From: Octopus sinensis
Taxonomy: Eukaryota
Length of the DNA stretch: 64,000 nt
Reading direction: 5' to 3'
NCBI RefSeq assembly: GCF_006345805.1
Contig: NC_043003.1
Location: forward strand, 52,018,001-52,082,000
Shown: piece by piece, positions 2,749 to 64,000 of the stretch
How the letters are laid out: each line of letters begins with the position of its first letter
How positions within the stretch are numbered: position 1 is the stretch's first letter
The notes under the pieces: model-generated
The model's database searches: none
What the model saw: the letters and a program-made list of their open reading frames with translations, nothing else
Told to the model about the DNA's origin: nothing
Made by a program: the position numbers and the translations under genes

Positions 2749-4053
2749 ATGCTGAAAAGTTCGTGTTCTTCGTCGGGGGACGAATCATCGATTGAAAGAG
2801 AAGCAAAGAAAACAGAAAGCTTAATTTTTGACAACGTTTCTGATGTGTCGGAGAGCGAATTTCCAACATTACCAAGAGTTATGAACACCAATAGAAAGAC
2901 AGAAAAAAGACCATCCAAAATGAAGAAAAGAAAAGTTTTGCGTTAGCGGCTGGTGGTGGAACGAGACAGCTGTCAACTGACATAAAAGAATATTTAAAAT
3001 ATAAAGATATGATAACAGAACGAAATGGAATAGTAAAAGTGGAACTACCAGAAAAAGAATTAACGGAATCAAAAAAGTAAAACATTATTTTAAAATCATT
3101 TTGCTTAAAAGCACGTAAAATTGATAAAATATGTGAACAAAAAATTGAAAAATGTCTAAAACCCATCTGGCAGGACATTACATATCTAGCCAGAGGGAAA
3201 AAGTTTGGAACCATCGTGGTGAAATTCAAGAATGCAGAAACGGCACAAAAACACTCTATAAAATCTTTAGAGTCGGAAGACACTCTGTTAATCCCAATTT
3301 ACATGGGAATGAGAACATCAAAATTGAGAATACCTAGAATTCCGCCCGGAATAAACCCTATGTGCTTGATGGCGGCGGTCCTGGCAAACAGGGAAGATAG
3401 TATTAACCTCCTGCAGGCTACCGTCACAGAAAATACTTATTGGACAGGTCAGACGCTTAACATCATATTGCAGGCTGACCAAAATAGTTTAGAACCGCTC
3501 CCAGAAATCGTGGAAGTAGGGGAGGAAGTTCTAAATATTTTTGTTGAGGGGCGTAAGTCCCGATGTTTCCAGTGTGGCCAACTGGGTCACATTAAAAAAT
3601 ATTGTAAAGAAGGTGTAGAAGAATCAGACGGCGAGGAGGAAGAAAGAGAGAGAGAAACAGAAGAAAAAATAAACACTAAAAGGAAAATGGAAGGATCGAA
3701 CCAGCAAAAGCAGAGCGAGCCGAGACCAAAAAACAGCCAAGAGAGACAGACCGAGGAAGGCGGAGGGGGTGGCGATCAGAGGAATAGCTGCACTTTACAG
3801 TAAAAACGAAGATTTAATGCGGGAAATAAAAACAAAAAAATCAGCAACTCGATTAATTGAACTGTCAGAGAAATATAAAAACTACGAATTTTACGAATTG
3901 GACGAAAAAACGTACATGTTGTCTAACAATATAGAAAATCGGTCTCAACATGGAGACTTGATTTTCACTAATCCATGTTTGAAAGCTTACCATCTCCGAC
4001 TCAAGAAAAGGTGGAGAATCCCTCTCCACAAGACACCCCGATCTAAAAGGTAA
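2749..4053 (+). pseudogene. Tx1 ORF1 (gag-like), with frameshifts and stops
   Basis: Segment 3216-3803 contains CFQCGQLGHIKKYC (CX2CX4HX4C). The upstream frame gives ITYLARGKKFGTIVVKFKNAETA, alignable to ORF1 at 48417. Confidence 0.8.
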
Positions 4054-4056
4054 GTC

Positions 4057-4958
4057 ATGTCTATTCCCATTGGTTGTATAAATGTTCGTGGCCTGATGTC
4101 AAGCTGGAAGCAAGGACGCTTCCTAAATGACATCAGGTCAAGAAATTTGGATATAATTGTTGCAACGCAAACCCGGGTGAAGGGGCCAAGTGATCTGCTC
4201 CCACTCCTGAACGGCTACGAGAAATACGTTTCTCCGAGTCGGGCGGGAGGTGGGGGTGTGGTGTTGGTCCTACTAAAAAGAAACCGGGTAGCCGAGAAAA
4301 AGTTGTTTTTTTTTTCTGATCCAGAAGACAGGTTGGTCGTTCTTGACCTGACATTCAGTTGTGACAAGACAATCAGGCTGATCGCTCTTTATGCACCCAA
4401 CATTATGGGCCCGCAAACTGAATATTTTCGTGACCTGGGAAAGTTCCTAGCCACGACGCATTCGCTAGTATTGTTAGGAGACTTTAACACAATATGTGTA
4501 GCACACTCAGATTGTGTTGGCTCGAACATGAACAGAAAATGTAAGCCAGGCTTACGAGATCTGCTAAGTCAATTTCAGCTAACAAATCCATATAGGTTGG
4601 AACACCCGAATACTCCACAGTGGACGTGGTCAAATAGTGACGGGTCTTCCAGAACATATCTAAATAGGATTTTAATTAGAGAAACAGATAAGTCCATAGT
4701 CGAGTGTCCACAGATTTTTCTAGTCAGCTACAATGACCACAAGATGGTTACCTGTAAACTGACGGTAGATAAGTTGCATAGTCAGGGATCTGGCTACTGG
4801 AGACTCAATATGTACCTTTTGGCGATTGAGGAGTACAGAAATCGGATCAAGATGTTAATACAGAGGGCATTAACAGGTACCATCATTAATAACAAATGGT
4901 GGTACGCCCTAAAAAGAGTCATCAAATATGAGTCTATTAGGTTTAGCATAAGTTTAGA
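4057..4958 (+). pseudogene. Tx1 ORF2 N-terminus: AP-like endonuclease domain
   Basis: CINVRGL, ATQT (normally ETH), GDFN, WTW, YLNRI (normally LDRI), NDH and GYWRLN motifs; catalytic substitutions suggest it is inactive. Confidence 0.85.
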
Positions 4959-5394
4959 TGGTTATGTGCAGACCCTTCTGAACTTCCAAGTGTTATGCAT
5001 ACAAAATTTCCTGCAACTGTCATGGTTTTAGGAGTTATCAGCAATGAAGGACATGTGATACCTCCTTACTTCTTTCCACAAGGTCTTAGAGTTAACTCTG
5101 CTGTCTATAGTGAGGTCCTGGAAATAATTTTTAGCCCTGGATCGACAGTGTATGCAATGGAAGGCCATATGTGCTTCAGTAAGGCCCTGCACTATCACAC
5201 ATGGCTCTAGTAACACAGGAATGAATGGTTGAAAATGTTCATGATCACATAACCCCTAACATTTGGCCTTCTAATCCACCAGATCTCAATCCATTGGATT
5301 ACTACATGTAGATCGTTGTTGAGAGAGGTCAATGAACACGCCTATAACACCAAAGATTCTTTGAAAGCTGCCATAGTCAGCGTAATGTCCAAAA
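4959..5394 (+). mobile_element. Internal fragment of a Tc1/mariner transposase (maT/DD37D-like)
   Basis: MHTKFPATVMVLGVISNEG...PWIDSVCNGRPYV...PDLNPLDYY; near-identical to part of 42449-42987. No TIR at the left junction, so it is probably joined to the Tx1 by deletion. Confidence 0.8.
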
Positions 5395-36944: not shown

Positions 36945-37335
36945 CAGAGGGGGAGTGCTGTAAAGAAGCTCGCTTTGCGACCACATGAGTTCGGGATCAG
37001 TCCCATTGTGAGACACCTTGGATTAGTGTCTTCTAGTATAGTCCTAAGCTGACCAATGCCTTGTGAGTGAATTTGGTGGACCGATACTGTGCGGAAGCCA
37101 GTCATATACATATATTTATATACCTTTGTGTATGTGAGTTTTTGTGTTTGTGCTGCCATTCCAACGCTTTACAATCGGTATTGTTTGTGTAGTGGTTCGG
37201 CAAAAGCGACCGATTGAGTAAATACCAATCTTTAAGAAGTAAGAACTGTGGTTGATTTGTTCGAGTAATAGCTATCAAGTTGGTGCTCCAGCATGGCCAC
37301 AGTCCAATAACTAAGTCAAGAGATAAAAAATAAAA
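36945..37335 (+). mobile_element. Old family A SINE
   Basis: Degenerate head and second half (ggttcggcaaaag...ggtgctccagcatggccacagtc). Confidence 0.65.
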
Positions 37336-38472: not shown

Positions 38473-39084
38473 TAATAAATAAAATATATGCATACATACA
38501 TACATACATGTACGTACATACATCTACATGTATATATACATGCATATATAAATATATATACGTGAGTACAGGACACCACAAATAGACGTAGAACTCAACG
38601 AGAAACGAAAACGGAAAAACAGGCATGGAACAGACTATTTTTTTACAACGAAAAACAGAGTACAAGACAAACTACACAAGGAAAAATCCCCTTCATCAGC
38701 TGTCCCTAGTTCAACTCTAGCGTGTTTCGAAGGTGAGGACAGAAGACGACTCGTCGAACTAGCCCTTCCTGCGAAAGAATTAAATAAAATTACTTCGCAG
38801 TAATTACTTGGAGAAGAAGAAACGAAACGAACGAATCGAATCGAATCGACGCGAGGGCGCTATATGTGTGTGTGCGTAGTTATGCATCTATTAGAGACAA
38901 ATCAGGCATGGTAGTAGTTAAAAAGGAAAAGTTGTTGTGCCCCGGCAGCTAGGCAAACTGAGGTGATACAGAGAAACGTGACCCGTCTGTAGACAGCACG
39001 AAACATTTACAGTGTATTTGATATTACCTCACATGAAACAAAAGCACACGAATATAGAATCTCATAATATTGTTTTGCATAAGG

Positions 39085-39660: not shown

Positions 39661-40346
39661 TCCTAAAATTACAAAGAAATTATTATTATTATTATTTCCA
39701 TTTTCGTTTGTGAAAATATTTTCACAAAAATAATGAAAACGAAACTCGAATTGAAATTATCTTCGTTAATCCAGATCAACGCTTCAAAGGATGGTAAAAT
39801 AGGGGAAATATATAAATAATAGTTGCTAACTGTTACTGTTGGTTGGGATATCACTACACTACTGTTTTACACCACCCACTAATGTTTCCGCTGTTTACAT
39901 TAAATAGAGACTGCTTTTTAAAAAAAAATCATAGTGTGAGAGAGGAGTGAGATTTAATGAAGCTCAGCTTTTGTTGCCTTTGCTTGTATGTTTTGTGGGG
40001 TGAGGTTTTTGGAGTTGGATGATAGAGATCTGTTTCCGTCTCTCCCTTGTCTTTTTGTCATTCTTGGGTTGAGTTTCGAGCAAGTACTGAATCAACACTA
40101 TTAATAATATCGCTTACAACGGCAGTAACAACGATGGTACCTGTAACCAGCCGATTGAATCGCATGAAGATATAACAACCGACTAACTCTCGCTTAAATC
40201 AAGTCTAACCGTCTTTAAAAATGAGTTATTTGAAAAAAAAAATTTTTTTAAGATGGGATATAATCATGGCCGGAACGCCAACCGATAAATAAGGATAAAA
40301 TGTGATTGGTGCAGGAGTGGCTGTGTGGTAAGAAACTAGAATTAAA

Positions 40347-40563
40347 AGGTTTTTTTGTCCGACACTTTAACGACTCTACCAGCTCGTCGCTTTGTTTTAA
40401 AAGTCGGAACAAATACTGCGAAATATTTTTTCTGACGCTCTACCGATTCTGCCAGCTCACCTCCCTAATGATTTCAAATTTTGGCAGCAAGCCAGTATTT
40501 TTAGACGAAGAGGTAAGACGATTACGTCGTTCCCCAGGATTCAATTGGTACTTATTTTGTCGA
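40347..40563 (-). repeat. Inverted copy of 39203-39421 flanked by tagaattaaa direct repeats
   Basis: Base-by-base reverse-complement match with few differences. Confidence 0.9.
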
Positions 40564-40564
40564 T

Positions 40565-42220
40565 TAGAATTAAAGGGGGATCAGCTAAGAAGCGTTTAGA
40601 AAATTGGTCAACCCATTTTAAAAACCTCCTTGGGAAGAATGCCAAAATCCCTGATAACCCCACTCTTCCAAGTGTGCCTATATCAGACACGCTGGACATC
40701 AACACCTCCCCTGTTACCATATTTGAACTAACAGCAGCCACCAAGCAACTAAAAGCCTCGAAAGCATTTGGTCTCGACAACATCCCAGCTATAATTTTGA
40801 AGGATGATAGATTTCACACACTTTTGCTCAACCTCTGCAACCACATACTTTCCACCTTTGTCGCTCCAAAGATTCGGAATCTCAAATCATCCCAATACCC
40901 CAAAAAGGCGATTTATCCCTCGTCACCAACTACAGGGGTATATCTCTAATGTCAATTGCTGCAAAACTGTACAACAAACTGATCCTAAATCGTCTTGTCC
41001 TTTTTTGTTTGTTGAACCTTTGCTCTGAAAGAGCCAAAATGGATTCAGACATGGGCGCTCAACGCTGAGCCAGATACTATGCCTACGCAGACTTATTGAA
41101 GAATCAAAAGCATTTAATCGCGATCTTGCAATGGTATTTGTAGACTTTTCTAAAGCGTTCGATTCTGTAGATAGGTACAAGATGTTTGAAATCCTTAAGC
41201 TCTATGGGATACCAGACAAAATCATTTCTGCCATCAAGGTCCTCTACACAGATACGTCTTAACCATCTTAACCCCTGACGGAGAAACATCATCTTTCTCA
41301 ATCAAAGCCGGAATACTGCAGGGAGATACACTCGCCCCATTTCTTTTCATCATTGTTGTTGATTATGTGCTACGTATGTCAGTTGATACCATCTCTGGCA
41401 AGGGCTTTGAAATAAAACCAAGAAGAAGTTCCAGACACCCAGCTGAGTACTTGACAGACACTGACTTTGCTGACGACATCGCTCTTAGTGATTCTCTCTC
41501 CAATGCCCAGTCTCTTTTACAATCTCTTGAACAAGCCTCAAATTGTGTACGTCTTTACCGCAATGAGGCCAAGACTGAATACATAAACAAGTGCCTGTCC
41601 AACAGTGATTGCATCATCCATACTCTCAATAATGCGCCCTTAAATATGGCTTCTGATTACAAATATCTTGGGTCATACATATCATCATCTGGAAAAGACT
41701 TTCTAACTAGAAAGGATATGGCCTGGTCAGCCTGTAATGACATGCATAAGATCTGGTCATCAAATCTAAGTAGAGACTTCAAACTTGAAATCTTCAAAGC
41801 CACAGTCAAACCAATTTTACTATATGGCTCAGAAACCTGGACGTTATCAAAGAAGCTTGAGAGGCAGTTGGATGGAACCTACACTCGCCTCCTTATGAGA
41901 GCTCAAAATCTCTCGTGGAAGCGCCATCCAACCAAAATGCAAATATATGGGAAACTACCACCTGTGTCATCTCTTGTGAAAGGTAGGAGAGTCCAGTTTG
42001 CTGGACATTGTTGTAGAGCTGAAAAAGAGGTAATTTCTACTCTTCTCCTCTGGAAGCCATCTACTCGCAATACCAGAGGGCGTACACTCTCCTACCCTGA
42101 TGTAATCTCCAGGGATACAGGCATCCAGCAACAGGACCTCCGTAATGCCATGATGGACCGTGAAGTCTGGCGTAGCATGGTAAATTCCATTGTCTCGACC
42201 ACGGTCGAACAATGATGATG
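40565..42220 (+). mobile_element. RTE-clade LINE, 5'-truncated, RT domain with frameshifts
   Basis: DFSKAFDSV, GILQGDTLAPFLF, DFADDIAL, YLGS, ILLYGSETW; (TGA)n tail; TSD aagaaact at 40330-40337 and 42221-42228. Confidence 0.92.
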
Positions 42221-42359
42221 AAGAAACTTGCTTCCAGACCACATGGTTCAGTCCTACTGCGTGGCACCATGGGCAAGAGTCTTCTACTTTAGCTTCGGGC
42301 CGACCAAAGCCTTGTGAATGGATTTGGTAGAGGAAACTGAAAGAAATACGTTGTATGTA

Positions 42360-47470: not shown

Positions 47471-48132
47471 GATCCGGATTATCATTATTATTATTTTGGT
47501 GAGTGGTGGGGTGCAAAGACAACCATATATTTATATATGGATATGACTGCTTCCATACAGTTTCCGTCGCCCGAATTCATTCACAGAGCATTGCTCAGTC
47601 TGGAGCTATTATAGAAGACACTTGCCCAAAATGCCGGGCAGTGGGATTGAACTCGAATTCACGTGGTTGCCAAGCGCGCTTCTTAACCACACAGCTATTT
47701 TTTAATTGTTAGCCAAAGCAAGAGAGGTGGTGACCGTGGGTTTTATAAATCTTCATAACCAGATAAGAATAAGATTTTTGCATCTGAAACACAACTTGAA
47801 CAGTAGTGGCTGTGTGGTAAGTAGCTTCTTACCAGACAGACGTGCTGTTTTTTGCTCCGGCAAATGTCACGTGTTAACGTGAATTATTGAACATTTTACG
47901 GCAACAGGTAGGACATTTTGGATATTTTTGGAAGCATAGTGAGGTTTATTGCTTGCCGTTAATACTTTTTTGGCATTAATGTTAATTAGTGTTAACACTT
48001 TTCTGCGCGTAATAAGCTTCACTTTGCTTCGGATGTATTTGTTCTGCCTGTTGGCGTATTTATTGTCTCACCTTTTAGTGAGAATTGTGTATTTTGAAGA
48101 GGCATAGCCCCTCCTCAAAAATTAATTTGTTC

Positions 48133-48248
48133 GCTTGGATTTACCACGGAGAACCAATTGTGCTTGGATTGACCACGGAGAACCAATTGTGCTTGGATTT
48201 ACCACGGAGAACCAATTGTGCTTGGATTTACCACGGAGAACCAAGTGT
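48133..48248 (+). repeat. Four 29-bp tandem repeats in the element's 5' UTR
   Basis: gcttggatttaccacggagaaccaattgt x4, no spacers. Confidence 0.95.
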
Positions 48249-48416
48249 GCTGCAACTAGGAGTACCCTGTTTCGTGAGGATTACCAGTTGCAGAACTGTG
48301 TTGCCATTATTTGAACTGTCTTCCTTCGTCCTTTTCTCTGTTCTGTCTTTCTGTTTTGTCATTGTGTTTTTTTCTTATTGGACTTTGAACTTTTAGTTGA
48401 ACTTTTTTTCAAAATC

Positions 48417-49619
48417 ATGGCAACAAAAGAAACCACTGCTTTGGAATGGGAGGTTGTCCCACCCAAGCAGTGGATTGAAAGTCTTGAGAAGAGGACGGTG
48501 GTCCTACGAACCTATTCTAGGTCGCGTGGAGCTATCGCCCTCTTCGACAGGAGCACCATAGAGAAAGAGTTGGGGAACCACCTACCAACGATAAAGTTTA
48601 TTTCTCGGGGGAGTAAATTTGCAACGGTGTGGTTGCTGTTTGGTACCCCCGAGGAAGCTAGCAGATTTGCTAGCGAGCCACTGGAGGGAGAGGAAATGCT
48701 GTTCCTCCCCTCGTATTGTGGCAGAAAAGTAAAAAGAGCCTGGGTTTGTGGGCTGCCCCCGGGCACGGAGGCGGAATGGATCGAGAAGACCATCCGGAGA
48801 GGCCTGGGGGATAGCGGACCCAGGCTACTGAGTGTGAAAATGGCTCCCGCGGTCGCCTGGGAGGGGTCAAAGGCAACTTTGACCCTGTGGACACCGGTGG
48901 CCGTGGGAGAAATGAAATTCCCGGACTTCCTGAGAATGGCTGGGCACAGGTACCCGGTGATACTCGAGGGACGCCCCCCCAAGTGTCACCTGTGCCTGAA
49001 GCCCGGACATATCAAGAGGAATTGTCCCGGGGGCCGTGGTGGTGCCCCGGAGCATGAAAGGGAAAAGGCGCCCGCCGCCCCCTCATTGGAGGGGGAGACG
49101 GTGGAAGTCGTGGAGGAGGTTGCCCCCACGAAAAGAAAGAGACAGGCGAGCAACAATGGCTGCTCGCCAAAGAACGCTCAGGTGGCGGAGGGGGATAGCG
49201 ATCCCCCGTGTCTGGTGACGGAGTCCCCTGGGTCAGCAGTCTCCCCCAAAAGAAGGAGGAGAAAAAGAAAGAAAGGTCGGGCGGCTGATATCCATGAGCC
49301 GCAGACGTTGACGGGAACTGTGCCGCCAACGAAAGAACTGAACGTATTGGTCCTCTTCTATAGAGGAGGAGAAATTGAAAAAAAAATGATGGAAGAGTAC
49401 CACAAGGGAGCTCCTTTAGCCTTCACACAGGACCCCGAATGGCCTCCGCAGATAGCTGTGGAGGCCGTGGCGTTCGACGTGACGCTTGGGCTAAAGGAGC
49501 TCAATGAAGATTATAGCTTGGTCCCGGGCGACGCGAACTCGGAACTTGATTACATTCTGAGGGAGGCGTGTTTGATGGTGGAGGGCGCGGGCACAAGCTA
49601 TTTCGAGGACGATATGTAA
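48417..49619 (+). CDS. Intact Tx1-type ORF1 protein (400 aa) with a CCHC zinc knuckle
   Basis: Uninterrupted from ATG 48417; CHLCLKPGHIKRNC knuckle, basic NLS-like KRRRRKRKK, RRM-like N-terminal half alignable to ORF1 at ~3100-3600. Confidence 0.85.
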   Translation: MATKETTALEWEVVPPKQWIESLEKRTVVLRTYSRSRGAIALFDRSTIEKELGNHLPTIKFISRGSKFATVWLLFGTPEEASRFASEPLEGEEMLFLPSYCGRKVKRAWVCGLPPGTEAEWIEKTIRRGLGDSGPRLLSVKMAPAVAWEGSKATLTLWTPVAVGEMKFPDFLRMAGHRYPVILEGRPPKCHLCLKPGHIKRNCPGGRGGAPEHEREKAPAAPSLEGETVEVVEEVAPTKRKRQASNNGCSPKNAQVAEGDSDPPCLVTESPGSAVSPKRRRRKRKKGRAADIHEPQTLTGTVPPTKELNVLVLFYRGGEIEKKMMEEYHKGAPLAFTQDPEWPPQIAVEAVAFDVTLGLKELNEDYSLVPGDANSELDYILREACLMVEGAGTSYFEDDM

Positions 49620-49634
49620 TTATTGAACTGTTAG

Positions 49635-49770
49635 TATTAATAATGGACTGCCAAGTCCAAAAATTGAAAAATTGAAAGAGGTTTAATACCTCGTTTTGTA
49701 TTTTTATTAATAATGGACTGCTAAGTCCAAAAATTGGAAAAATTGCAAGAGGTTTAATACCTCGTTTTAT
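49635..49770 (+). repeat. 70-bp tandem duplication in the 3' UTR
   Basis: tattaataatggactg.. at 49635 and 49705; each unit has ggac/gtcc and gaggt/acctc hairpins. Confidence 0.9.
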
Positions 49771-50093
49771 GTTTATCTTTAAAAAGAACAATGTTTTAGA
49801 GAAGCGAAAGTCGGCGGGCGCTTTTTGTCTTCTCCCATCCTTATCATCTGTCTTTCATTATCATTCACTTCATTAATGTCCTCGTCCAGCCCGCAAAGCT
49901 AACTTAATCTGTGTACTGCCTTTATGGCAAATGTTTTGAAATAAAGTAGCTTGCTTACCAACCACATGGTTCCGGGTTCAGTCCCACTGTGTGGTACCTT
50001 GGGAAAGTGTCTTCTACTATAGCCTCGGGCCGACCAAAGCCTTGTGAGTAGATTTGGTAGACGGAAAGTGAAAGAAGCCCGTCGTATATATGT

Positions 50094-50171
<78 letters not shown>

Positions 50172-51279
50172 TGTTTGTGTGTCTGTGTTTGTCCCCCCAA
50201 TATCGCTTGACAACCGATGCTGGTGTGTTTACGTCCTCGTAACTTAGCGGTTCGGCAAAAGAGACCGATACAATAAGTACTACGCTTACAAAGAATAAGT
50301 CCTGGGGTCGATTTGCTCGGCTAAAGGCGGTGCACCAGCATGGCCGCAGTCAAATGACTGAAACAAGTAAAAGAGTAAGAGTATTCAAAAGTTAAGAATG
50401 CCTGCATAAAGTACATGGGCATAGAGGGTGTCTCGGAGTTGAGAAGAAAATGCTAGTAACAACATGAATTTCGTTAAAGGAACCTAAAGACCAACAGCTG
50501 GTGTCCAACAAGGTGATATATTAAATATACCACTCTAAATGCTGATCTGGGGGGTCTACAGACAACTATGGAATCTGTATGCGGTTGTTCGAAGTGCTAG
50601 AAATAGCAGCCAAATATCTATCAAATCACAATCTAGCGTCTTTAAGAAATAGATCTATGATATACATGTGTATTTTAACGCATTTATGAACTTGTTTTTA
50701 CACACAAACATAGCCACAGACACAGATACACACAAACACACGCATTCATATACAGAAATACTTATACGCATAAATTCACCAACACATATATGCACATACG
50801 CACACATGCACGGACATATTCACTCACTTGTACGTACGTACGTATGTACGTGTGTGTGTGTGTGTGTGTGTGTGTTCACACACATACACATATACACATT
50901 ATTTGTACACGTATACACATATTCTACGTGGATATACACATATGTAAATAAATGTTGGGAAAAACGAATGCTCCTGTGTGATTGTGTTTGAGTTCATAAC
51001 ATAGAAAGAAAGAGAGAAGGAAAGAGAGAGAGAGAGAGAGAGAGTGTGTGTGTGAGAGAGAAAAAGAGAGCGAATGAGAGAGGGAGAGAGACAGAGGGGG
51101 AGAGAGAGAGAGAGCTTATTTAGGTTTGGTGGCAATGTTCTAGACAAAACACAGGTCATATTACCAAAAACGTGGTAGAAGTCTCTGTGCATTGAGCAAC
51201 TTTTCTTCTCAATGGCACCATATGGAATGTTCTAGTAATCTTGGAGATCTGATTTACTTACAATCACTTTTCCCAGGCG

Positions 51280-57500: not shown

Positions 57501-57870
57501 CTTTTACTTGTTTCAGTCATTTGACTGCGGCCATGCTGGAGCCCCGCCTTTAGTCAAGCAAATCGAACCCAGGACTTATTCTTTGTAAGCCTAGTACTTA
57601 TTATATCGGTCTCTTTTGCCAAACCGCTAAGTTGCGGGGGCGTAAACACACCAGCATCGGTTGTCAAGCGATGTTGGGGGGACAAACACAGACACACAAA
57701 CACAAACAGATATATACGACGGACTTCTTTCAGTTTCCGTCTACCAAATCCACTCACAAGGCTTTGGTCGGCCCGTGGCTATAGTATAAGACACTTGCCG
57801 AAAGTGCCACGCACTGAACCCGGAACCATGTGGTTGGTAAGCAAGCTACTTACCACACAGCCACTCCTGC
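57501..57870 (-). mobile_element. Intact family A SINE (empty-site reference)
   Basis: Contains an uninterrupted aagtagcttgcttacca at 57835-57851. Confidence 0.9.
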
Positions 57871-63094: not shown

Positions 63095-63139
63095 GGCCGA
63101 AATTTTAAAGTTACTGTCACCCTATCTCTGATTCCCAAC

Positions 63140-64000
63140 ACGGCTTCGTGCCGAAGAGATCATGCTTGACCAACTTACTGGTAATGAAAGAATTGGTGAC
63201 GCGTATCATGGATGATGGTGACGCTGTTGACATCGTTTTATTGGACTTTGCCAAAGCTTTTGACTCGGTTAACCACCGCTTATTACTTGTCAAGCTTGAA
63301 GCATATAGTTTCCATCCGGATATTGTACGATGGGTTGGTGCCTTCCTCTCAGATCGCTCCTTCCAAGTCCAAGTTAATGGTTCGCTGTCCGACGTCTCCA
63401 GTGCGAGCAGTGGCGTGCCTCAAGGTTCAGTGCTTGGGCCCTTATTGTTTTTAGTCTTCATAAATGACTTGCCCGACGACCTCACGCAACACACCCTTCT
63501 ATTTGCCGATGATGTCAAACTGGTCGCTCCTCGCGGTGATATAGATGATCTTCGTCGATGTCTCCACCAAGTTTGGAGATGGTCTAACGAATGGGACCTG
63601 TGTCTGAACGTGTCAAAGTGCTGTCATCTGCCTGTTGGCTCTTCTCCTGCAACTCAACTTGATTTCGAGCCGGGTCGTCTGCTGCTGGAGAGGACCGACC
63701 AGGTAAAGGACCTGGGTATCTTGGTGGATTTTTCCTTTTCACCTTCGGCCTAATGCGTCCATGCTGCCAACAAAGCACGCAGAGTTCTGTTTTTGATTCG
63801 ACGGTCATTCGGAATGCTCACAGCAGCCATATTCCTACTGCTCTATGTCATGCTTGTGAGACCCATGTTGGAGTACGGGATTCAAGCCTCTTTTCCTTAT
63901 CTCCTCAAAGACATACATCATCTCGAAAGAGTCCAGAAGCTGGCTACCCGCATGGTTCTTGGTCTCAAGCATTTGTCTTATGAAGAAAGGCTGAAGACGC
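63140..64000 (+). mobile_element. CR1 LINE RT region; runs off the window
   Basis: RSCLTNLL, LDFAKAFDSVNH, GVPQGSVLGPLLF, LFADD, VKDLG; stop at 63751-63753. Confidence 0.92.

What the first reader, a model, noticed from the sequence alone, without database searches (positions are those of the whole stretch)
47801..49960. Intact ORF1-only Tx1-like retrotransposon inserted in the tRNA head of a SINE
Seen: a family A SINE is split after ...TTACCA, and aagtagctt(g)cttacca is duplicated on both sides (47819-47834, 49944-49960). The same 17-mer is uninterrupted in the copy at 57835-57851. The 2.1-kb insert has a 5' UTR with 29-bp monomers, one stop-free 400-aa CCHC-knuckle ORF, no endonuclease or RT, and an AATAA-ending 3' UTR. 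It is the only intact TE ORF in the window. Established: Tx1-clade L1s are often target-specific (Tx1 into Tx1d, Keno into U2 snRNA, Dewa into tRNA arrays), and ORF1-only HAL1 elements exist in other L1 lineages. Inference: this is a non-autonomous, ORF1-retaining Tx1 family that parasitises tRNA-derived SINEs (or tRNA genes), mobilised by a partner ORF2.
Basis: partly seen in the sequence, partly recalled or inferred. Interest (0 to 1): 0.88.

Follow-up and report, generated by a model that had tools for sequence, protein, structure and literature searches.

The report
ORF1-only LINE relic inside a SINE
A 2.1-kb retrotransposon that keeps only the RNA-binding first gene of an L1/Tx1-type LINE has inserted into the head of a short repeat (SINE) in an octopus-like genome; two decayed relatives in Octopus sinensis are also joined to a SINE head, so this is a small non-autonomous family with a probable liking for that site, and a variant of known kinds rather than a new kind.

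Summary
**Observation: confirmed.** A 2,109-bp insert (47835-49943) splits a SINE, with a 16/17-bp target-site duplication. It has a 582-bp 5' UTR with 4.1 monomers of 29 bp, one intact 400-aa ORF, no endonuclease or RT, and a 324-bp 3' UTR with no poly(A).

**The ORF.** The model shows two RRM-like domains, one CCHC knuckle and a disordered tail, which is a type-I ORF1p. Remote homologues (25-30% identity) are ORF1s of complete octopod LINEs. The ORF2 of one scores 331 bits to Xenopus Tx1 and 244 bits to human L1.

**ORF1-only is a lineage trait.** Two decayed copies in O. sinensis (about 60% aa identity) also lack ORF2, and one ends its ORF at the homologous stop. N-terminal dN/dS is about 0.11-0.22.

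**SINE targeting is only partly supported.**
- All three copies abut a SINE head cut within about 2 nt of the same position.
- Only the window copy has the SINE remainder and a duplication.
- An unrelated LINE fragment (40338-42220) entered another SINE at the same first-strand nick, so the site may be a general hot spot.

**Not found or not resolved.**
- No partner ORF2 and no shared 3' end were found.
- Tx1 membership cannot be tested, because the element has no RT.

**New here.** A conserved, very stable 95-nt stem-loop lies inside the ORF's 3' part.

**Verdict.** New variant of known kinds (HAL1-like, Tx1-like targeting); moderate interest.

The parts
47801..47834 (+). Left half of the host SINE (SINE positions about 2-36; contains the A-box-like TGGCTGTGTGG)
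   Evidence: Alignment with five intact copies; blastn with the SINE consensus.
47819..47834 (+). Left target-site duplication AAGTAGCTT-CTTACCA (16 nt)
47835..49943 (+). Whole insert: ORF1-only non-autonomous L1/Tx1-superfamily element, 2,109 bp
   Evidence: Single copy in the window. No TIR or LTR. No EN or RT.
47835..48416 (+). 5' UTR. It starts about 42 nt further in than the O. sinensis relatives and shares conserved blocks with their 5' UTRs.
   Evidence: Alignment A2; blastn 72% over 137 nt to L001.
48133..48251 (+). 29-bp monomers, 4.1 copies, specific to this copy (about one copy in L001/L006)
   Evidence: TRF; the repeat finder D1; alignment A2.
48417..49619 (+). ORF1, 400 aa plus stop, intact
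   Evidence: Homologues. N-terminal dN/dS 0.11-0.22 against the O. sinensis copies.
48465..48965 (+). Tandem RRM-like domains (residues about 17-183)
   Evidence: AlphaFold2 pLDDT mostly above 90. Best Foldseek PDB hits are two-RRM proteins: UP1/hnRNP A1, IMP3 RRM12, NONO/SFPQ.
48984..49025 (+). CCHC zinc knuckle (C190, C193, H198, C203)
   Evidence: Pfam zf-CCHC E 0.0099, sub-threshold. The profile of the family alignment hits retroviral nucleocapsid and ZCCHC8 knuckles at E about 6e-6.
49408..49502 (+). Very stable 95-nt stem-loop inside the 3' part of the ORF, conserved in L006; candidate cis-acting RNA element
   Evidence: MFE -63.3 kcal/mol, z -7.98, 0 of 200 shuffles as stable. The L006 homologue has z -4.0. 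It is 87% identical over 101 nt without indels, against about 67% in the rest of the ORF. 92% of cells pair, with no compensatory changes.
49620..49943 (+). 3' UTR without poly(A), ending ...TTTTGAAATA. It holds a 71-bp unit x1.9 (49635-49768) with small hairpins.
   Evidence: RNA fold z -2.39. No similarity to L006 or to any fetched LINE.
49944..49960 (+). Right target-site duplication AAGTAGCTTGCTTACCA (17 nt)
49944..50192 (+). Right part of the host SINE (positions 20-161) with its (TA)n(TG)n tail
40311..42345 (+). Second interrupted SINE, used as a comparison. Head 40311-40337, 8-bp duplication AAGAAACT, a 1.9-kb 5'-truncated non-Tx1 LINE at 40338-42220, SINE body 42221-42345. Its 3' junction is at the same SINE position (GGT|AAG).
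   Evidence: RVT_1 + DUF6451. No hit to Tx1-like ORF2.

Best explanation
**What it is.** The insert is a retrotransposed copy of a non-autonomous, ORF1-only derivative of an L1-superfamily (Tx1-like) LINE. It is the cephalopod counterpart of mammalian HAL1.

**Shown**
- It encodes only a type-I ORF1p: two RRM-like domains, one CCHC knuckle, and a disordered basic tail with a conserved C-terminal motif.
- It has no endonuclease or RT.
- It sits inside a SINE, flanked by a 16/17-bp duplication of SINE positions 20-36.
- It has no poly(A) tail, TIR or LTR.
- The ORF1-only layout and the junction to a SINE head recur in two decayed relatives in O. sinensis.
- The N-terminal two-thirds of the ORF evolved under purifying selection.

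**Inferred: how it moved.** It moved by target-primed reverse transcription, using an ORF2 protein supplied in trans.
1. The bottom strand was nicked at 5'-CTACTT|ACCACA (between SINE positions 19 and 20).
2. The freed ...CTT-3'OH primed on the A-rich RNA end (...GAAAUA[AA]).
3. The top strand was cut 16-17 nt downstream at 5'-CTTACCA|ACCACA.

Both cuts precede ACCACA in an imperfect palindrome.

**Inferred: its lifestyle.**
- The lineage prefers this position in SINE heads, which is a harmless and very abundant target.
- Copies embedded there can be transcribed together with the head. That would explain head-bearing copies that lack the downstream SINE.
- The conserved 95-nt stem-loop in the ORF's 3' part and the 3' UTR hairpins are candidate handles for the partner's RT.
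For: **Insertion signature**
- Two SINE halves overlap by one 17-mer that is single in intact copies.
- There are no TIRs or LTRs.

**ORF1 identity**
- The AF2 model has pLDDT above 90 over most of residues 10-205.
- The best Foldseek hits are tandem-RRM proteins. The CCHC knuckle is seen.
- Type I ORF1p is defined as RRM plus CCHC, and such variants are described as consistent with the Tx1 clade (PMC5203782).

**LINE ancestry**
- phmmer gives 52 hits, nearly all cephalopod among those looked up.
- Homologues in L002, L003, L005 and L010 are immediately followed by ORF2. The ORF2s of L002, L003 and L005 carry Exo_endo_phos and zf-RVT, with RVT_1 scored in L003 and L005; L010's ORF2 was identified by tblastn only.
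- L003 ORF2 scores 243.8 bits to human L1 ORF2p and 331 bits to Xenopus Tx1 ORF2. The BLASTP match to Tx1 is 30% identity over 830 aa.

**A family, not a one-off**
- L001 and L006 are 54-60% identical in protein and 67-78% in DNA.
- No ORF2 lies downstream of either.
- L006 keeps the same C-terminal motif and the same stop position.
- dN/dS is 0.11-0.22 with dS above 2 by most estimates.

**SINE association**
- All three 5' junctions lie within about 2 nt of SINE position 36.
- The window copy begins about 42 nt further into the 5' UTR than L001/L006. The junction is therefore fixed on the SINE side, not on the element side.
- The L001/L006 heads are of the GCTTCC SINE subfamily, while the window host is of the GCTTACC subfamily. 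This argues for at least two independent events.
- With about 20 SINE copies in the 271 kb held, my rough estimate for a random insertion hitting that 5-nt window in the same orientation is about 2e-4.

**Precedents**
- Tx1 families target other transposons, snRNA genes, 5S rRNA genes and microsatellites (PMC4494074).
- Dewa targets the tRNA-Leu spacer (PMC3706591).
- HAL1 encodes only ORF1p and arose several times (PMC5753468).

**Stem-loop:**
Against: - Only three copies could be examined. No eukaryotic genome could be searched by DNA.
- L001 and L006 have no SINE remainder and no detectable duplication at the 3' side. They do not prove insertion into a SINE.
- Their heads diverge from each other about as much as the adjacent UTR does. 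That also fits a head inherited with the element.
- The 3' UTRs of the window copy and L006 are unrelated.
- No autonomous element sharing the 3' UTR or the stem-loop was found in 271 kb.
- An unrelated LINE used the same nick position. The preference may belong to the SINE sequence rather than to this element's partner.
- The ORF1 link to Tx1-like LINEs is remote: 25-30% identity, E 1e-13 to 1e-21 by tblastn.
- The C-terminal 139 aa have no homologues outside the lineage.
- The stem-loop shows no compensatory changes, with only two sequences.
Confidence: 0.65

Rival explanations
1. The SINE head is part of the element rather than its target. An ancestor acquired the first 35-36 nt of a SINE at its 5' end, and copies carry it wherever they land. 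It could have been acquired by RT template switching onto a SINE RNA, or by read-through from one master copy lying in a SINE. There is no real target specificity.
For: - L001 and L006 have the head but no SINE body downstream and no duplication.
- Their similarity to each other starts at the SINE 5' end.
- The head diverges at a rate similar to the neighbouring UTR.
- Some Tx1-Mar families carry U1- or U2-derived heads at their 5' ends, attributed to template switch (PMC4494074).
Against: - The window copy has the rest of the SINE directly 3' of it, with a 16/17-bp duplication. A head-carrying RNA landing at random would not produce that.
- The window copy lacks the first about 42 nt of the L001/L006 5' UTR yet joins the head at the same SINE position.
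- The heads belong to different SINE subfamilies.
- A mixed model also fits: on-target masters are co-transcribed with the head, and their off-target daughters keep it. That model is folded into the best explanation.
Confidence: 0.2
2. The SINE head holds a general hot spot for LINE endonuclease nicking (GGT|AAG on the top strand, CTT|ACC on the bottom strand, within an imperfect palindrome). Any LINE-mobilised RNA lands there more often than by chance. The association says nothing specific about this element or its partner.
For: - A 1.9-kb 5'-truncated LINE of another type (RVT_1 + DUF6451, no similarity to Tx1-like ORF2) sits in another SINE copy.
- It has an 8-bp duplication AAGAAACT that starts at the same SINE position 20.
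- My rough estimate of this happening by chance in the window is about 0.01.
Against: - The other held copy of that LINE's 3' end (L006, minus strand, near 38713) is not in a SINE.
- The 5' junctions differ: position 27 with an 8-bp duplication, against position 36 with a 17-bp one.
- The hairpin at the site is not unusually stable as DNA (z -1.27).
- Most SINE copies held are uninterrupted.
Confidence: 0.25
3. The ORF is a domesticated, LINE-ORF1-derived host gene (like mammalian L1TD1) or a retrocopy of one. The window copy is a retrogene rather than a member of a propagating transposon family.
For: - The 400-aa ORF is intact, and dN/dS is 0.11-0.22 against relatives that are otherwise saturated at synonymous sites.
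- NCBI annotates the O. sinensis relative as a protein-coding locus.
- Very few copies are visible in protein databases.
Against: - The locus is intronless and sits within a SINE, flanked by a duplication.
- The two O. sinensis relatives lie on different chromosome records. They are pseudogenes with stops, a frameshift and a broken knuckle.
- UTR monomer amplification and 5' length variation are transposon-like.
- Purifying selection is also expected for the ORF1 of an active lineage.
Confidence: 0.1
4. It is a single full-length Tx1-like LINE copy that lost ORF2 through a deletion after insertion.
For: The window also contains a 3'-truncated fragment of a Tx1-like LINE (3045-5028), which shows that such deletions occur.
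Against: - L006 shares the ORF end, C-terminal motif and stop, and like L001 has no ORF2.
- The C-terminal half of the protein has no similarity to any ORF2 or to other ORF1 tails.
- The 3' UTR ends cleanly at the duplication.
Confidence: 0.03

Closest known systems
HAL1 (half-L1) of mammals
   Same: A non-autonomous LINE derivative that keeps only ORF1 and UTRs, forms a lineage of its own, and must borrow ORF2p in trans (PMC5753468).
   Different: - HAL1 derives from vertebrate L1 with a type-II ORF1p (coiled coil, RRM, CTD) and a poly(A) tail.
- This element has a type-I ORF1p (two RRM-like domains plus CCHC) and no poly(A).
- It has a lineage-specific disordered C-terminal half.
- It is associated with one position of a SINE.
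Target-specific Tx1-clade LINEs (Tx1L in Tx1D, Keno in U2, Mutsu in 5S, Dewa at the tRNA-Leu spacer, Tx1-Mar in Mariner-N4_AMi)
   Same: - L1-superfamily elements that insert at one position of a multicopy sequence, often another transposon.
- Some carry small-RNA-derived heads at the 5' end.
- Non-autonomous riders (SINEU) share the target (PMC4494074; PMC3706591).
- The nearest ORF2-bearing relatives of this ORF1 score best to Xenopus Tx1.
   Different: - Those are autonomous (ORF1 + ORF2) or are short SINEs. This one is ORF1-only.
- None of the papers I read mentions a SINE head as target.
- Specificity here rests on three copies.
Full-length Tx1-like LINEs of octopods (L003 in O. vulgaris, L010 in O. 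sinensis, L005 in Argonauta hians, fragment at window 3045-5028)
   Same: Homologous ORF1 core of RRM-like domains plus CCHC; no poly(A) at the 3' end of the L003 unit.
   Different: - Only 25-30% ORF1 identity.
- They carry ORF2 (APE + RT + zf-RVT).
- They sit in head-to-tail tandem arrays, not in SINE heads.
- Their UTRs are unrelated.

Membership tests
Non-LTR retrotransposon copy made by target-primed reverse transcription | Flanking target-site duplication of variable length; no terminal inverted repeats or LTRs | tested here: met
   16/17-bp duplication of SINE positions 20-36; no TIR or LTR.
Non-LTR retrotransposon copy made by target-primed reverse transcription | Fixed 3' end with variable 5' end among copies | tested here: inconclusive
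   The 5' start differs by about 42 nt from L001/L006. The 3' ends could not be compared: L001 is truncated and the L006 3' UTR is unrelated.
HAL1-like (ORF1-only non-autonomous LINE derivative) | Encodes a protein homologous to the ORF1p of autonomous LINEs | tested here: met
   phmmer and tblastn hits to ORF1s that are followed by APE+RT ORF2 in L002, L003, L005 and L010.
HAL1-like (ORF1-only non-autonomous LINE derivative) | No ORF2 in several copies that share the ORF1 end | tested here: met
   No EN or RT in the insert or downstream of L001 and L006. L006 has the same C-terminal motif and stop. Only three copies were examined.
HAL1-like (ORF1-only non-autonomous LINE derivative) | Shares its 3' end with an autonomous partner that mobilises it | tested here: not met
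   No LINE in the 271 kb held shares the 3' UTR or the stem-loop. The sample is far too small to exclude a partner.
HAL1 proper | Derived from vertebrate L1 with type-II ORF1p (Transposase_22) | tested here: not met
   No Transposase_22 hit in Pfam. The fold is tandem RRM plus CCHC. It is therefore HAL1-like in lifestyle, not a HAL1 member.
Tx1 clade of the L1 group | RT domain groups with Tx1 in an RT phylogeny | not testable with these tools
   The element has no RT. Indirectly, the ORF2 of a distant ORF1 relative (L003) scores 331 bits to Xenopus Tx1 ORF2 against 244 bits to human L1 ORF2p. No tree was built.
Tx1 clade of the L1 group | Type-I ORF1p (RRM plus CCHC zinc knuckle) | tested here: met
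   AF2 model and Foldseek; CCHC; definition taken from PMC5203782. The feature is also found in plant L1s, so it is not exclusive to Tx1.
Target-specific LINE lineage | A large share of copies flanked by the same target sequence at the same position (more than 20% of flanks in PMC4494074) | tested here: inconclusive
   3 of 3 5' flanks are a SINE head cut at about position 36, but only 1 of 3 3' flanks is SINE. n = 3, from two species. An unrelated LINE shares the nick site.
tRNA-derived SINE (the host repeat) | Head recognisable as a tRNA | tested here: not met
   ARAGORN finds no tRNA. Rfam gives no tRNA hit even at E up to 10.
tRNA-derived SINE (the host repeat) | A and B boxes at tRNA-like spacing | tested here: met
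   Read from the consensus. TGGCTGTGTGG at positions 8-18 and GGTTCAGTCCC at 51-61 each have one mismatch to the textbook boxes. Tested by eye only.

The most novel reading that the evidence does not exclude
A three-tier parasitism: an ORF1-only Tx1-like lineage has specialised on the anticodon-arm-equivalent position of an abundant SINE.
- It uses the SINE as a safe landing site.
- It is transcribed together with the SINE head.
- It hijacks a partner ORF2p through the conserved 95-nt stem-loop embedded in its own coding sequence.
- Its retained ORF1p is needed in cis for this.
Probability: 0.3. Interest if true: 0.6.

Novelty: new variant of a known kind. Interest (0 to 1): 0.42.

Why it matters
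If the preference is real, it adds SINE heads to the list of safe-haven targets used by Tx1-like LINEs. It would also be an ORF1-only (HAL1-style) derivative outside mammals, in the Tx1-like branch.

That would make it a natural system for two questions:
- What does ORF1p contribute when ORF2p comes in trans?
- Which RNA feature lets a rider be picked up? The conserved stem-loop is a concrete candidate.

It would also show that octopod genomes, known for SINE and RTE expansion, hold young L1/Tx1-type elements. The intact tandem copies seen in passing in O. vulgaris point the same way.

If the preference is not real, this is one ordinary nested insertion.

Tried and rejected
**Searches that found nothing**
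- Exact-protein look-up of the 400-aa ORF: not on record.
- Homologue search with the C-terminal 139 aa: none. phmmer of residues 206-400 against the six-frame translation of everything held hits only L001 and L006.
- Look-up of P0002, the best distant hit: not on record.
- Two scans of JGI metagenome contigs with conserved motifs of the lineage: no match.
- Covariance model of the stem-loop over all 271 kb: only the two training sequences.
- Rfam at E up to 1 over 47700-50200: only spurious low-complexity or miRNA-type matches, and no ribozyme or tRNA.
- phmmer of the ORF against PDB: nothing.

**Comparisons that came out negative**
- SINE remainder or duplications around L001 and L006: no alignment above shuffles and no shared k-mers.
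- The 42 nt after the head in L001/L006 as diverged SINE sequence: not above shuffles.
- 5' transduction of upstream flank shared by L001 and L006: not significant, 221 of 2000 shuffles reach the score.
- 3' UTR similarity between the window and L006, or to any LINE held: none.
- An apparent head-less SINE at 36963-37089 is an intact diverged copy.
- The hairpin at the target site as an explanation for a hot spot: not unusually stable.
- L007, a Logan contig with several ORF1-like pieces, is degenerate and gave no usable junctions.

Full report
**1.

The window looks octopod. The only close protein relative is from Octopus sinensis, and the remoter ones whose source I looked up are mostly from Octopus and Argonauta; the rest are unnamed contigs.

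At 47801-47834 there is the first 35 nt or so of a SINE that occurs about ten more times in the window. It stops at ...AAGTAGCTT-CTTACCA. The SINE resumes at 49944 with AAGTAGCTTGCTTACCAACCACATGG and runs to its (TA)n(TG)n tail. In five intact copies the 17-mer is present once. So the two halves overlap by a 16/17-bp target-site duplication.

The 2,109 bp in between (47835-49943) are single-copy in the window and have no terminal inverted or long terminal repeats. They contain:
- a 582-bp 5' UTR with 4.1 tandem 29-bp monomers;
- one intact ATG-initiated ORF of 400 codons at 48417-49619;
- a 324-bp 3' UTR with a 71-bp unit repeated 1.9 times.

The element ends ...TTTTGAAATA without poly(A). The AATAAA hexamer is completed by the first bases of the duplication. 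tblastn with Tx1-like ORF2 proteins finds no endonuclease or RT in the insert. The other TE-like ORFs in the window are fragments.

One qualification concerns the 'tRNA head'. ARAGORN and Rfam find no tRNA in the SINE. The tRNA origin rests on A-box-like (positions 8-18) and B-box-like (51-61) motifs at tRNA spacing. It also rests on my memory of the older octopus SINE literature, which I did not check.

**2. What the ORF is**

Pfam sees only a sub-threshold zinc knuckle, and the sequence has no PDB relative. An AlphaFold2 model built on 26 homologues is confident over most of residues 10-205, with pLDDT mostly above 90. It shows two beta-alpha-beta domains followed by the CCHC knuckle. Residues 210-400 are predicted disordered apart from two short helices.

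Foldseek's best PDB matches are two-RRM proteins: hnRNP A1 UP1, IMP3 RRM12 and NONO/SFPQ. RRM plus CCHC is the definition of type-I ORF1p. Variants of it in non-mammalian animals are described as consistent with the Tx1 clade (PMC5203782).

An exhaustive phmmer search of 1.8 billion representatives gave 52 hits. Only one exceeds 50% identity over most of the ORF; a second (P0022) matches at 59% over the first 46 residues only. The rest are 20-40% identical over residues about 10-250.

**3. The remote relatives are LINE ORF1s**

I fetched the loci of several of them. In O. vulgaris (L003), O. sinensis (L002, L010) and Argonauta hians (L005) the homologous ORF is immediately followed by a long ORF2. 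The ORF2s of L002, L003 and L005 carry Exo_endo_phos and zf-RVT, with RVT_1 scored in L003 and L005; L010's ORF2 was identified by tblastn at 60-96% identity to L003's.

The L003 ORF2 matches human L1 ORF2p at 243.8 bits across EN and RT. It matches Xenopus 'Transposon TX1 149 kDa protein' at 331 bits, with 30% identity over 830 residues by BLASTP. So the ORF belongs to the ORF1 family of L1-superfamily LINEs whose nearest named relative is Tx1.

This link is transitive. The element has no RT, I built no RT tree, and the ORF1 link is only 25-30% identity. A fragment of the same LINE type lies in the window at 3045-5028.

**4. ORF1-only is a property of the lineage**

Two further members were found in O. 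sinensis.
- **L001** (LOC115225585) is 54% identical over 331 aligned residues and 68% identical in DNA. It has a stop after codon 281 and a Cys-to-Phe change in the knuckle. It loses homology after the equivalent of residue 322.
- **L006** has several stops and a frameshift but covers the ORF to its end.

Neither has any ORF2-like sequence downstream. L006 keeps the C-terminal motif (...QDPEWPPQIAVE...AGTS...) and stops at the homologous codon. This rules out a private post-insertion deletion in the window copy.

Between the window ORF and the two relatives, dN/dS over the RRM-knuckle part is 0.11-0.22, with dS above 2 by most estimates and therefore rough. That indicates long purifying selection on the protein. 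The C-terminal half has no homologue outside the lineage, and none in any ORF2 or other ORF1 tail that I hold.

**5. The SINE association**

In both O. sinensis copies the 5' UTR is directly preceded by a SINE head:
- L001: ...GGCTGTGTGGTAAGTAGCTTGCTTCC|TGTGCATGCG
- L006: ...GCCGTGTGGTAAGAAGTTTGCTTCCA|CTGCGCATG

Each is cut within about 2 nt of the position used in the window. Three points argue for at least two independent events at the same SINE position.
- The window copy starts about 42 nt further into the 5' UTR than L001/L006 yet abuts the same SINE position. The junction is fixed on the target side.
- The O. sinensis heads belong to the GCTTCC SINE subfamily, while the window host is of the GCTTACC subfamily.
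- The upstream flanks are unrelated.

With roughly 20 SINE copies in the 271 kb I hold, my rough estimate for a random insertion hitting that 5-nt window in the same orientation is about 2e-4.

The evidence against is equally concrete.
- Neither O. sinensis copy has the rest of the SINE or any duplication on its 3' side.
- L001 is truncated. L006 runs into (TG)19 about 95 nt after the stop, and its 3' UTR is unrelated to the window's.
- These two copies could therefore carry the head as part of the transcribed unit. The literature describes this for Tx1-Mar families with U1 or U2 heads (PMC4494074).

The reading that fits all three copies has three steps. Copies land in SINE heads. Embedded copies are transcribed together with the head. 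Some daughters land elsewhere but keep the head. This is inference.

**6. A complication found in passing**

A second SINE in the window is interrupted. The head 40311-40337 and the body 42221-42345 flank a 1.9-kb 5'-truncated LINE of a different type: RVT_1 plus DUF6451, an (ATG)n-like tail, and no similarity to Tx1-like ORF2. Its duplication is the 8-bp AAGAAACT.

Its 3' junction, which marks the first-strand nick, lies at the same SINE position (GGT|AAG) as that of the ORF1-only element. The other copy of that LINE's 3' end that I hold is not in a SINE. This could be coincidence; my rough estimate is about 0.01. Otherwise this spot of the SINE is a general hot spot for LINE endonucleases, which would weaken the case for a dedicated partner.

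In the ORF1-only insertion both cuts precede ACCACA: bottom strand CTACTT|ACCACA, top strand CTTACCA|ACCACA. They sit in an imperfect palindrome. The corresponding DNA hairpin is not unusually stable (z -1.27).

**7. A conserved RNA structure inside the ORF**

The last 90 codons diverge in a different way from the rest. Against L006, dS is only 0.29-0.38, compared with more than 2 upstream, and dN/dS is 0.6-0.9.

The core of this region, 49408-49502, folds into a 95-nt extended stem-loop. Its MFE is -63.3 kcal/mol with z -7.98, and none of 200 shuffles is as stable. The L006 homologue folds the same way with z -4.0.

Over 101 nt the two are 87% identical without indels, including an identical 31-nt stretch that holds the apical hairpin. 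With two sequences there are no compensatory changes, and 92% of cells pair. A covariance model finds no other instance in the sequences held, and Rfam has nothing there.

I read it as a candidate cis-acting element, for instance the handle by which a partner's RT picks up this RNA. That is a hypothesis only. The 3' UTR also folds somewhat better than shuffles (z -2.39).

**8. Comparison with what is known**

In lifestyle this is HAL1-like. HAL1 is a non-autonomous L1 derivative that encodes only ORF1p and arose several times in mammals (PMC5753468). It is not a HAL1 member, because its ORF1p is type I and not Transposase_22.

In target behaviour it resembles Tx1-clade lineages. Those insert at one position of multicopy sequences, including other transposons (PMC4494074; PMC3706591). 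Membership in Tx1 cannot be tested without an RT, and specificity is inconclusive at n = 3.

I found no description of an ORF1-only Tx1-like element, or of a SINE head as a LINE target, in the papers I read. That search was not exhaustive.

**9. Verdict**

- 'ORF1-only non-autonomous LINE derivative' is well supported.
- 'Tx1-like' is plausible but indirect.
- 'Parasitises SINE heads' is suggestive but unproven, with two live rivals: the head as part of the element, and a general hot spot.
- No partner was identified.

The decisive test is a genome-wide census of copies and flanks, which these tools cannot run.

Noticed in passing
window 40311-42345: A second SINE copy is split by a 1.9-kb 5'-truncated LINE of another type (RVT_1 + DUF6451, ends ...CAATGATGATG) with an 8-bp duplication AAGAAACT. 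Its 3' junction is at the same SINE position (GGT|AAG) as the ORF1-only element, so the SINE head may be a general insertion hot spot.
   Followed up: partly
L003 4446-19184 (O. vulgaris OX597840.1) and L010 (O. sinensis CM016867.1): Tx1-like LINEs with both ORFs sit in head-to-tail tandem arrays. In L003, three 5.27-kb units are 99% identical, and the first has intact ORF1 and ORF2 (1132 aa: APE + RT + zf-RVT). The units have no poly(A) and join ...CACTGATAAG|GACGTTAC. They look young. The octopus LINE paper I read (PMC9115989) reports only RTE and Dong as full-length elements.
   Followed up: partly
window 3045-5028: A fragment of the same Tx1-like LINE: an ORF1-like ORF with a CCHC knuckle at 3081-3800, and an endonuclease part at 4054-5028 that is 67% identical in protein to L003 ORF2. 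It is truncated at its 3' side, which is unusual for a LINE copy.
   Followed up: no
window 49344-49616 versus L006 17391-17672: Divergence within the lineage is mosaic. The C-terminal 88 codons have dS 0.29-0.38, against more than 2 for the N-terminal part of the same pair. This could reflect nucleotide-level constraint from the stem-loop or recombination between subfamilies.
   Followed up: partly
L004 9959-11137 (O. vulgaris), L009 10055-10378 (O. bimaculoides), L007/L008 (Logan contigs): Other distant ORF1-like ORFs also have no Tx1-like ORF2 downstream on the same strand. L007 carries three degenerate ORF1-like pieces about 1.6 kb apart. ORF1-only derivatives may be recurrent in octopods.
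   Followed up: no
window 48417-49619: The ORF is 56% G+C in a window of 39% G+C. Its UTRs are 33-39% G+C.
   Followed up: no
window 63109-63750 and L004 18331-21138 (minus strand): Further RT fragments of other LINE types (RVT_1; motifs such as LLDFAKAFD and GVPQGSVLGPLLF). They are unrelated to the finding.
   Followed up: no
window 50193-50300: After the (TG)n tail of the host SINE, the sequence (...GTCCCCCCAATATCGCTTGACAACCGATGCTGG...) looked to me like another common octopus repeat, so the SINE unit may be longer or composite. This is a recollection only and was not tested.
   Followed up: no
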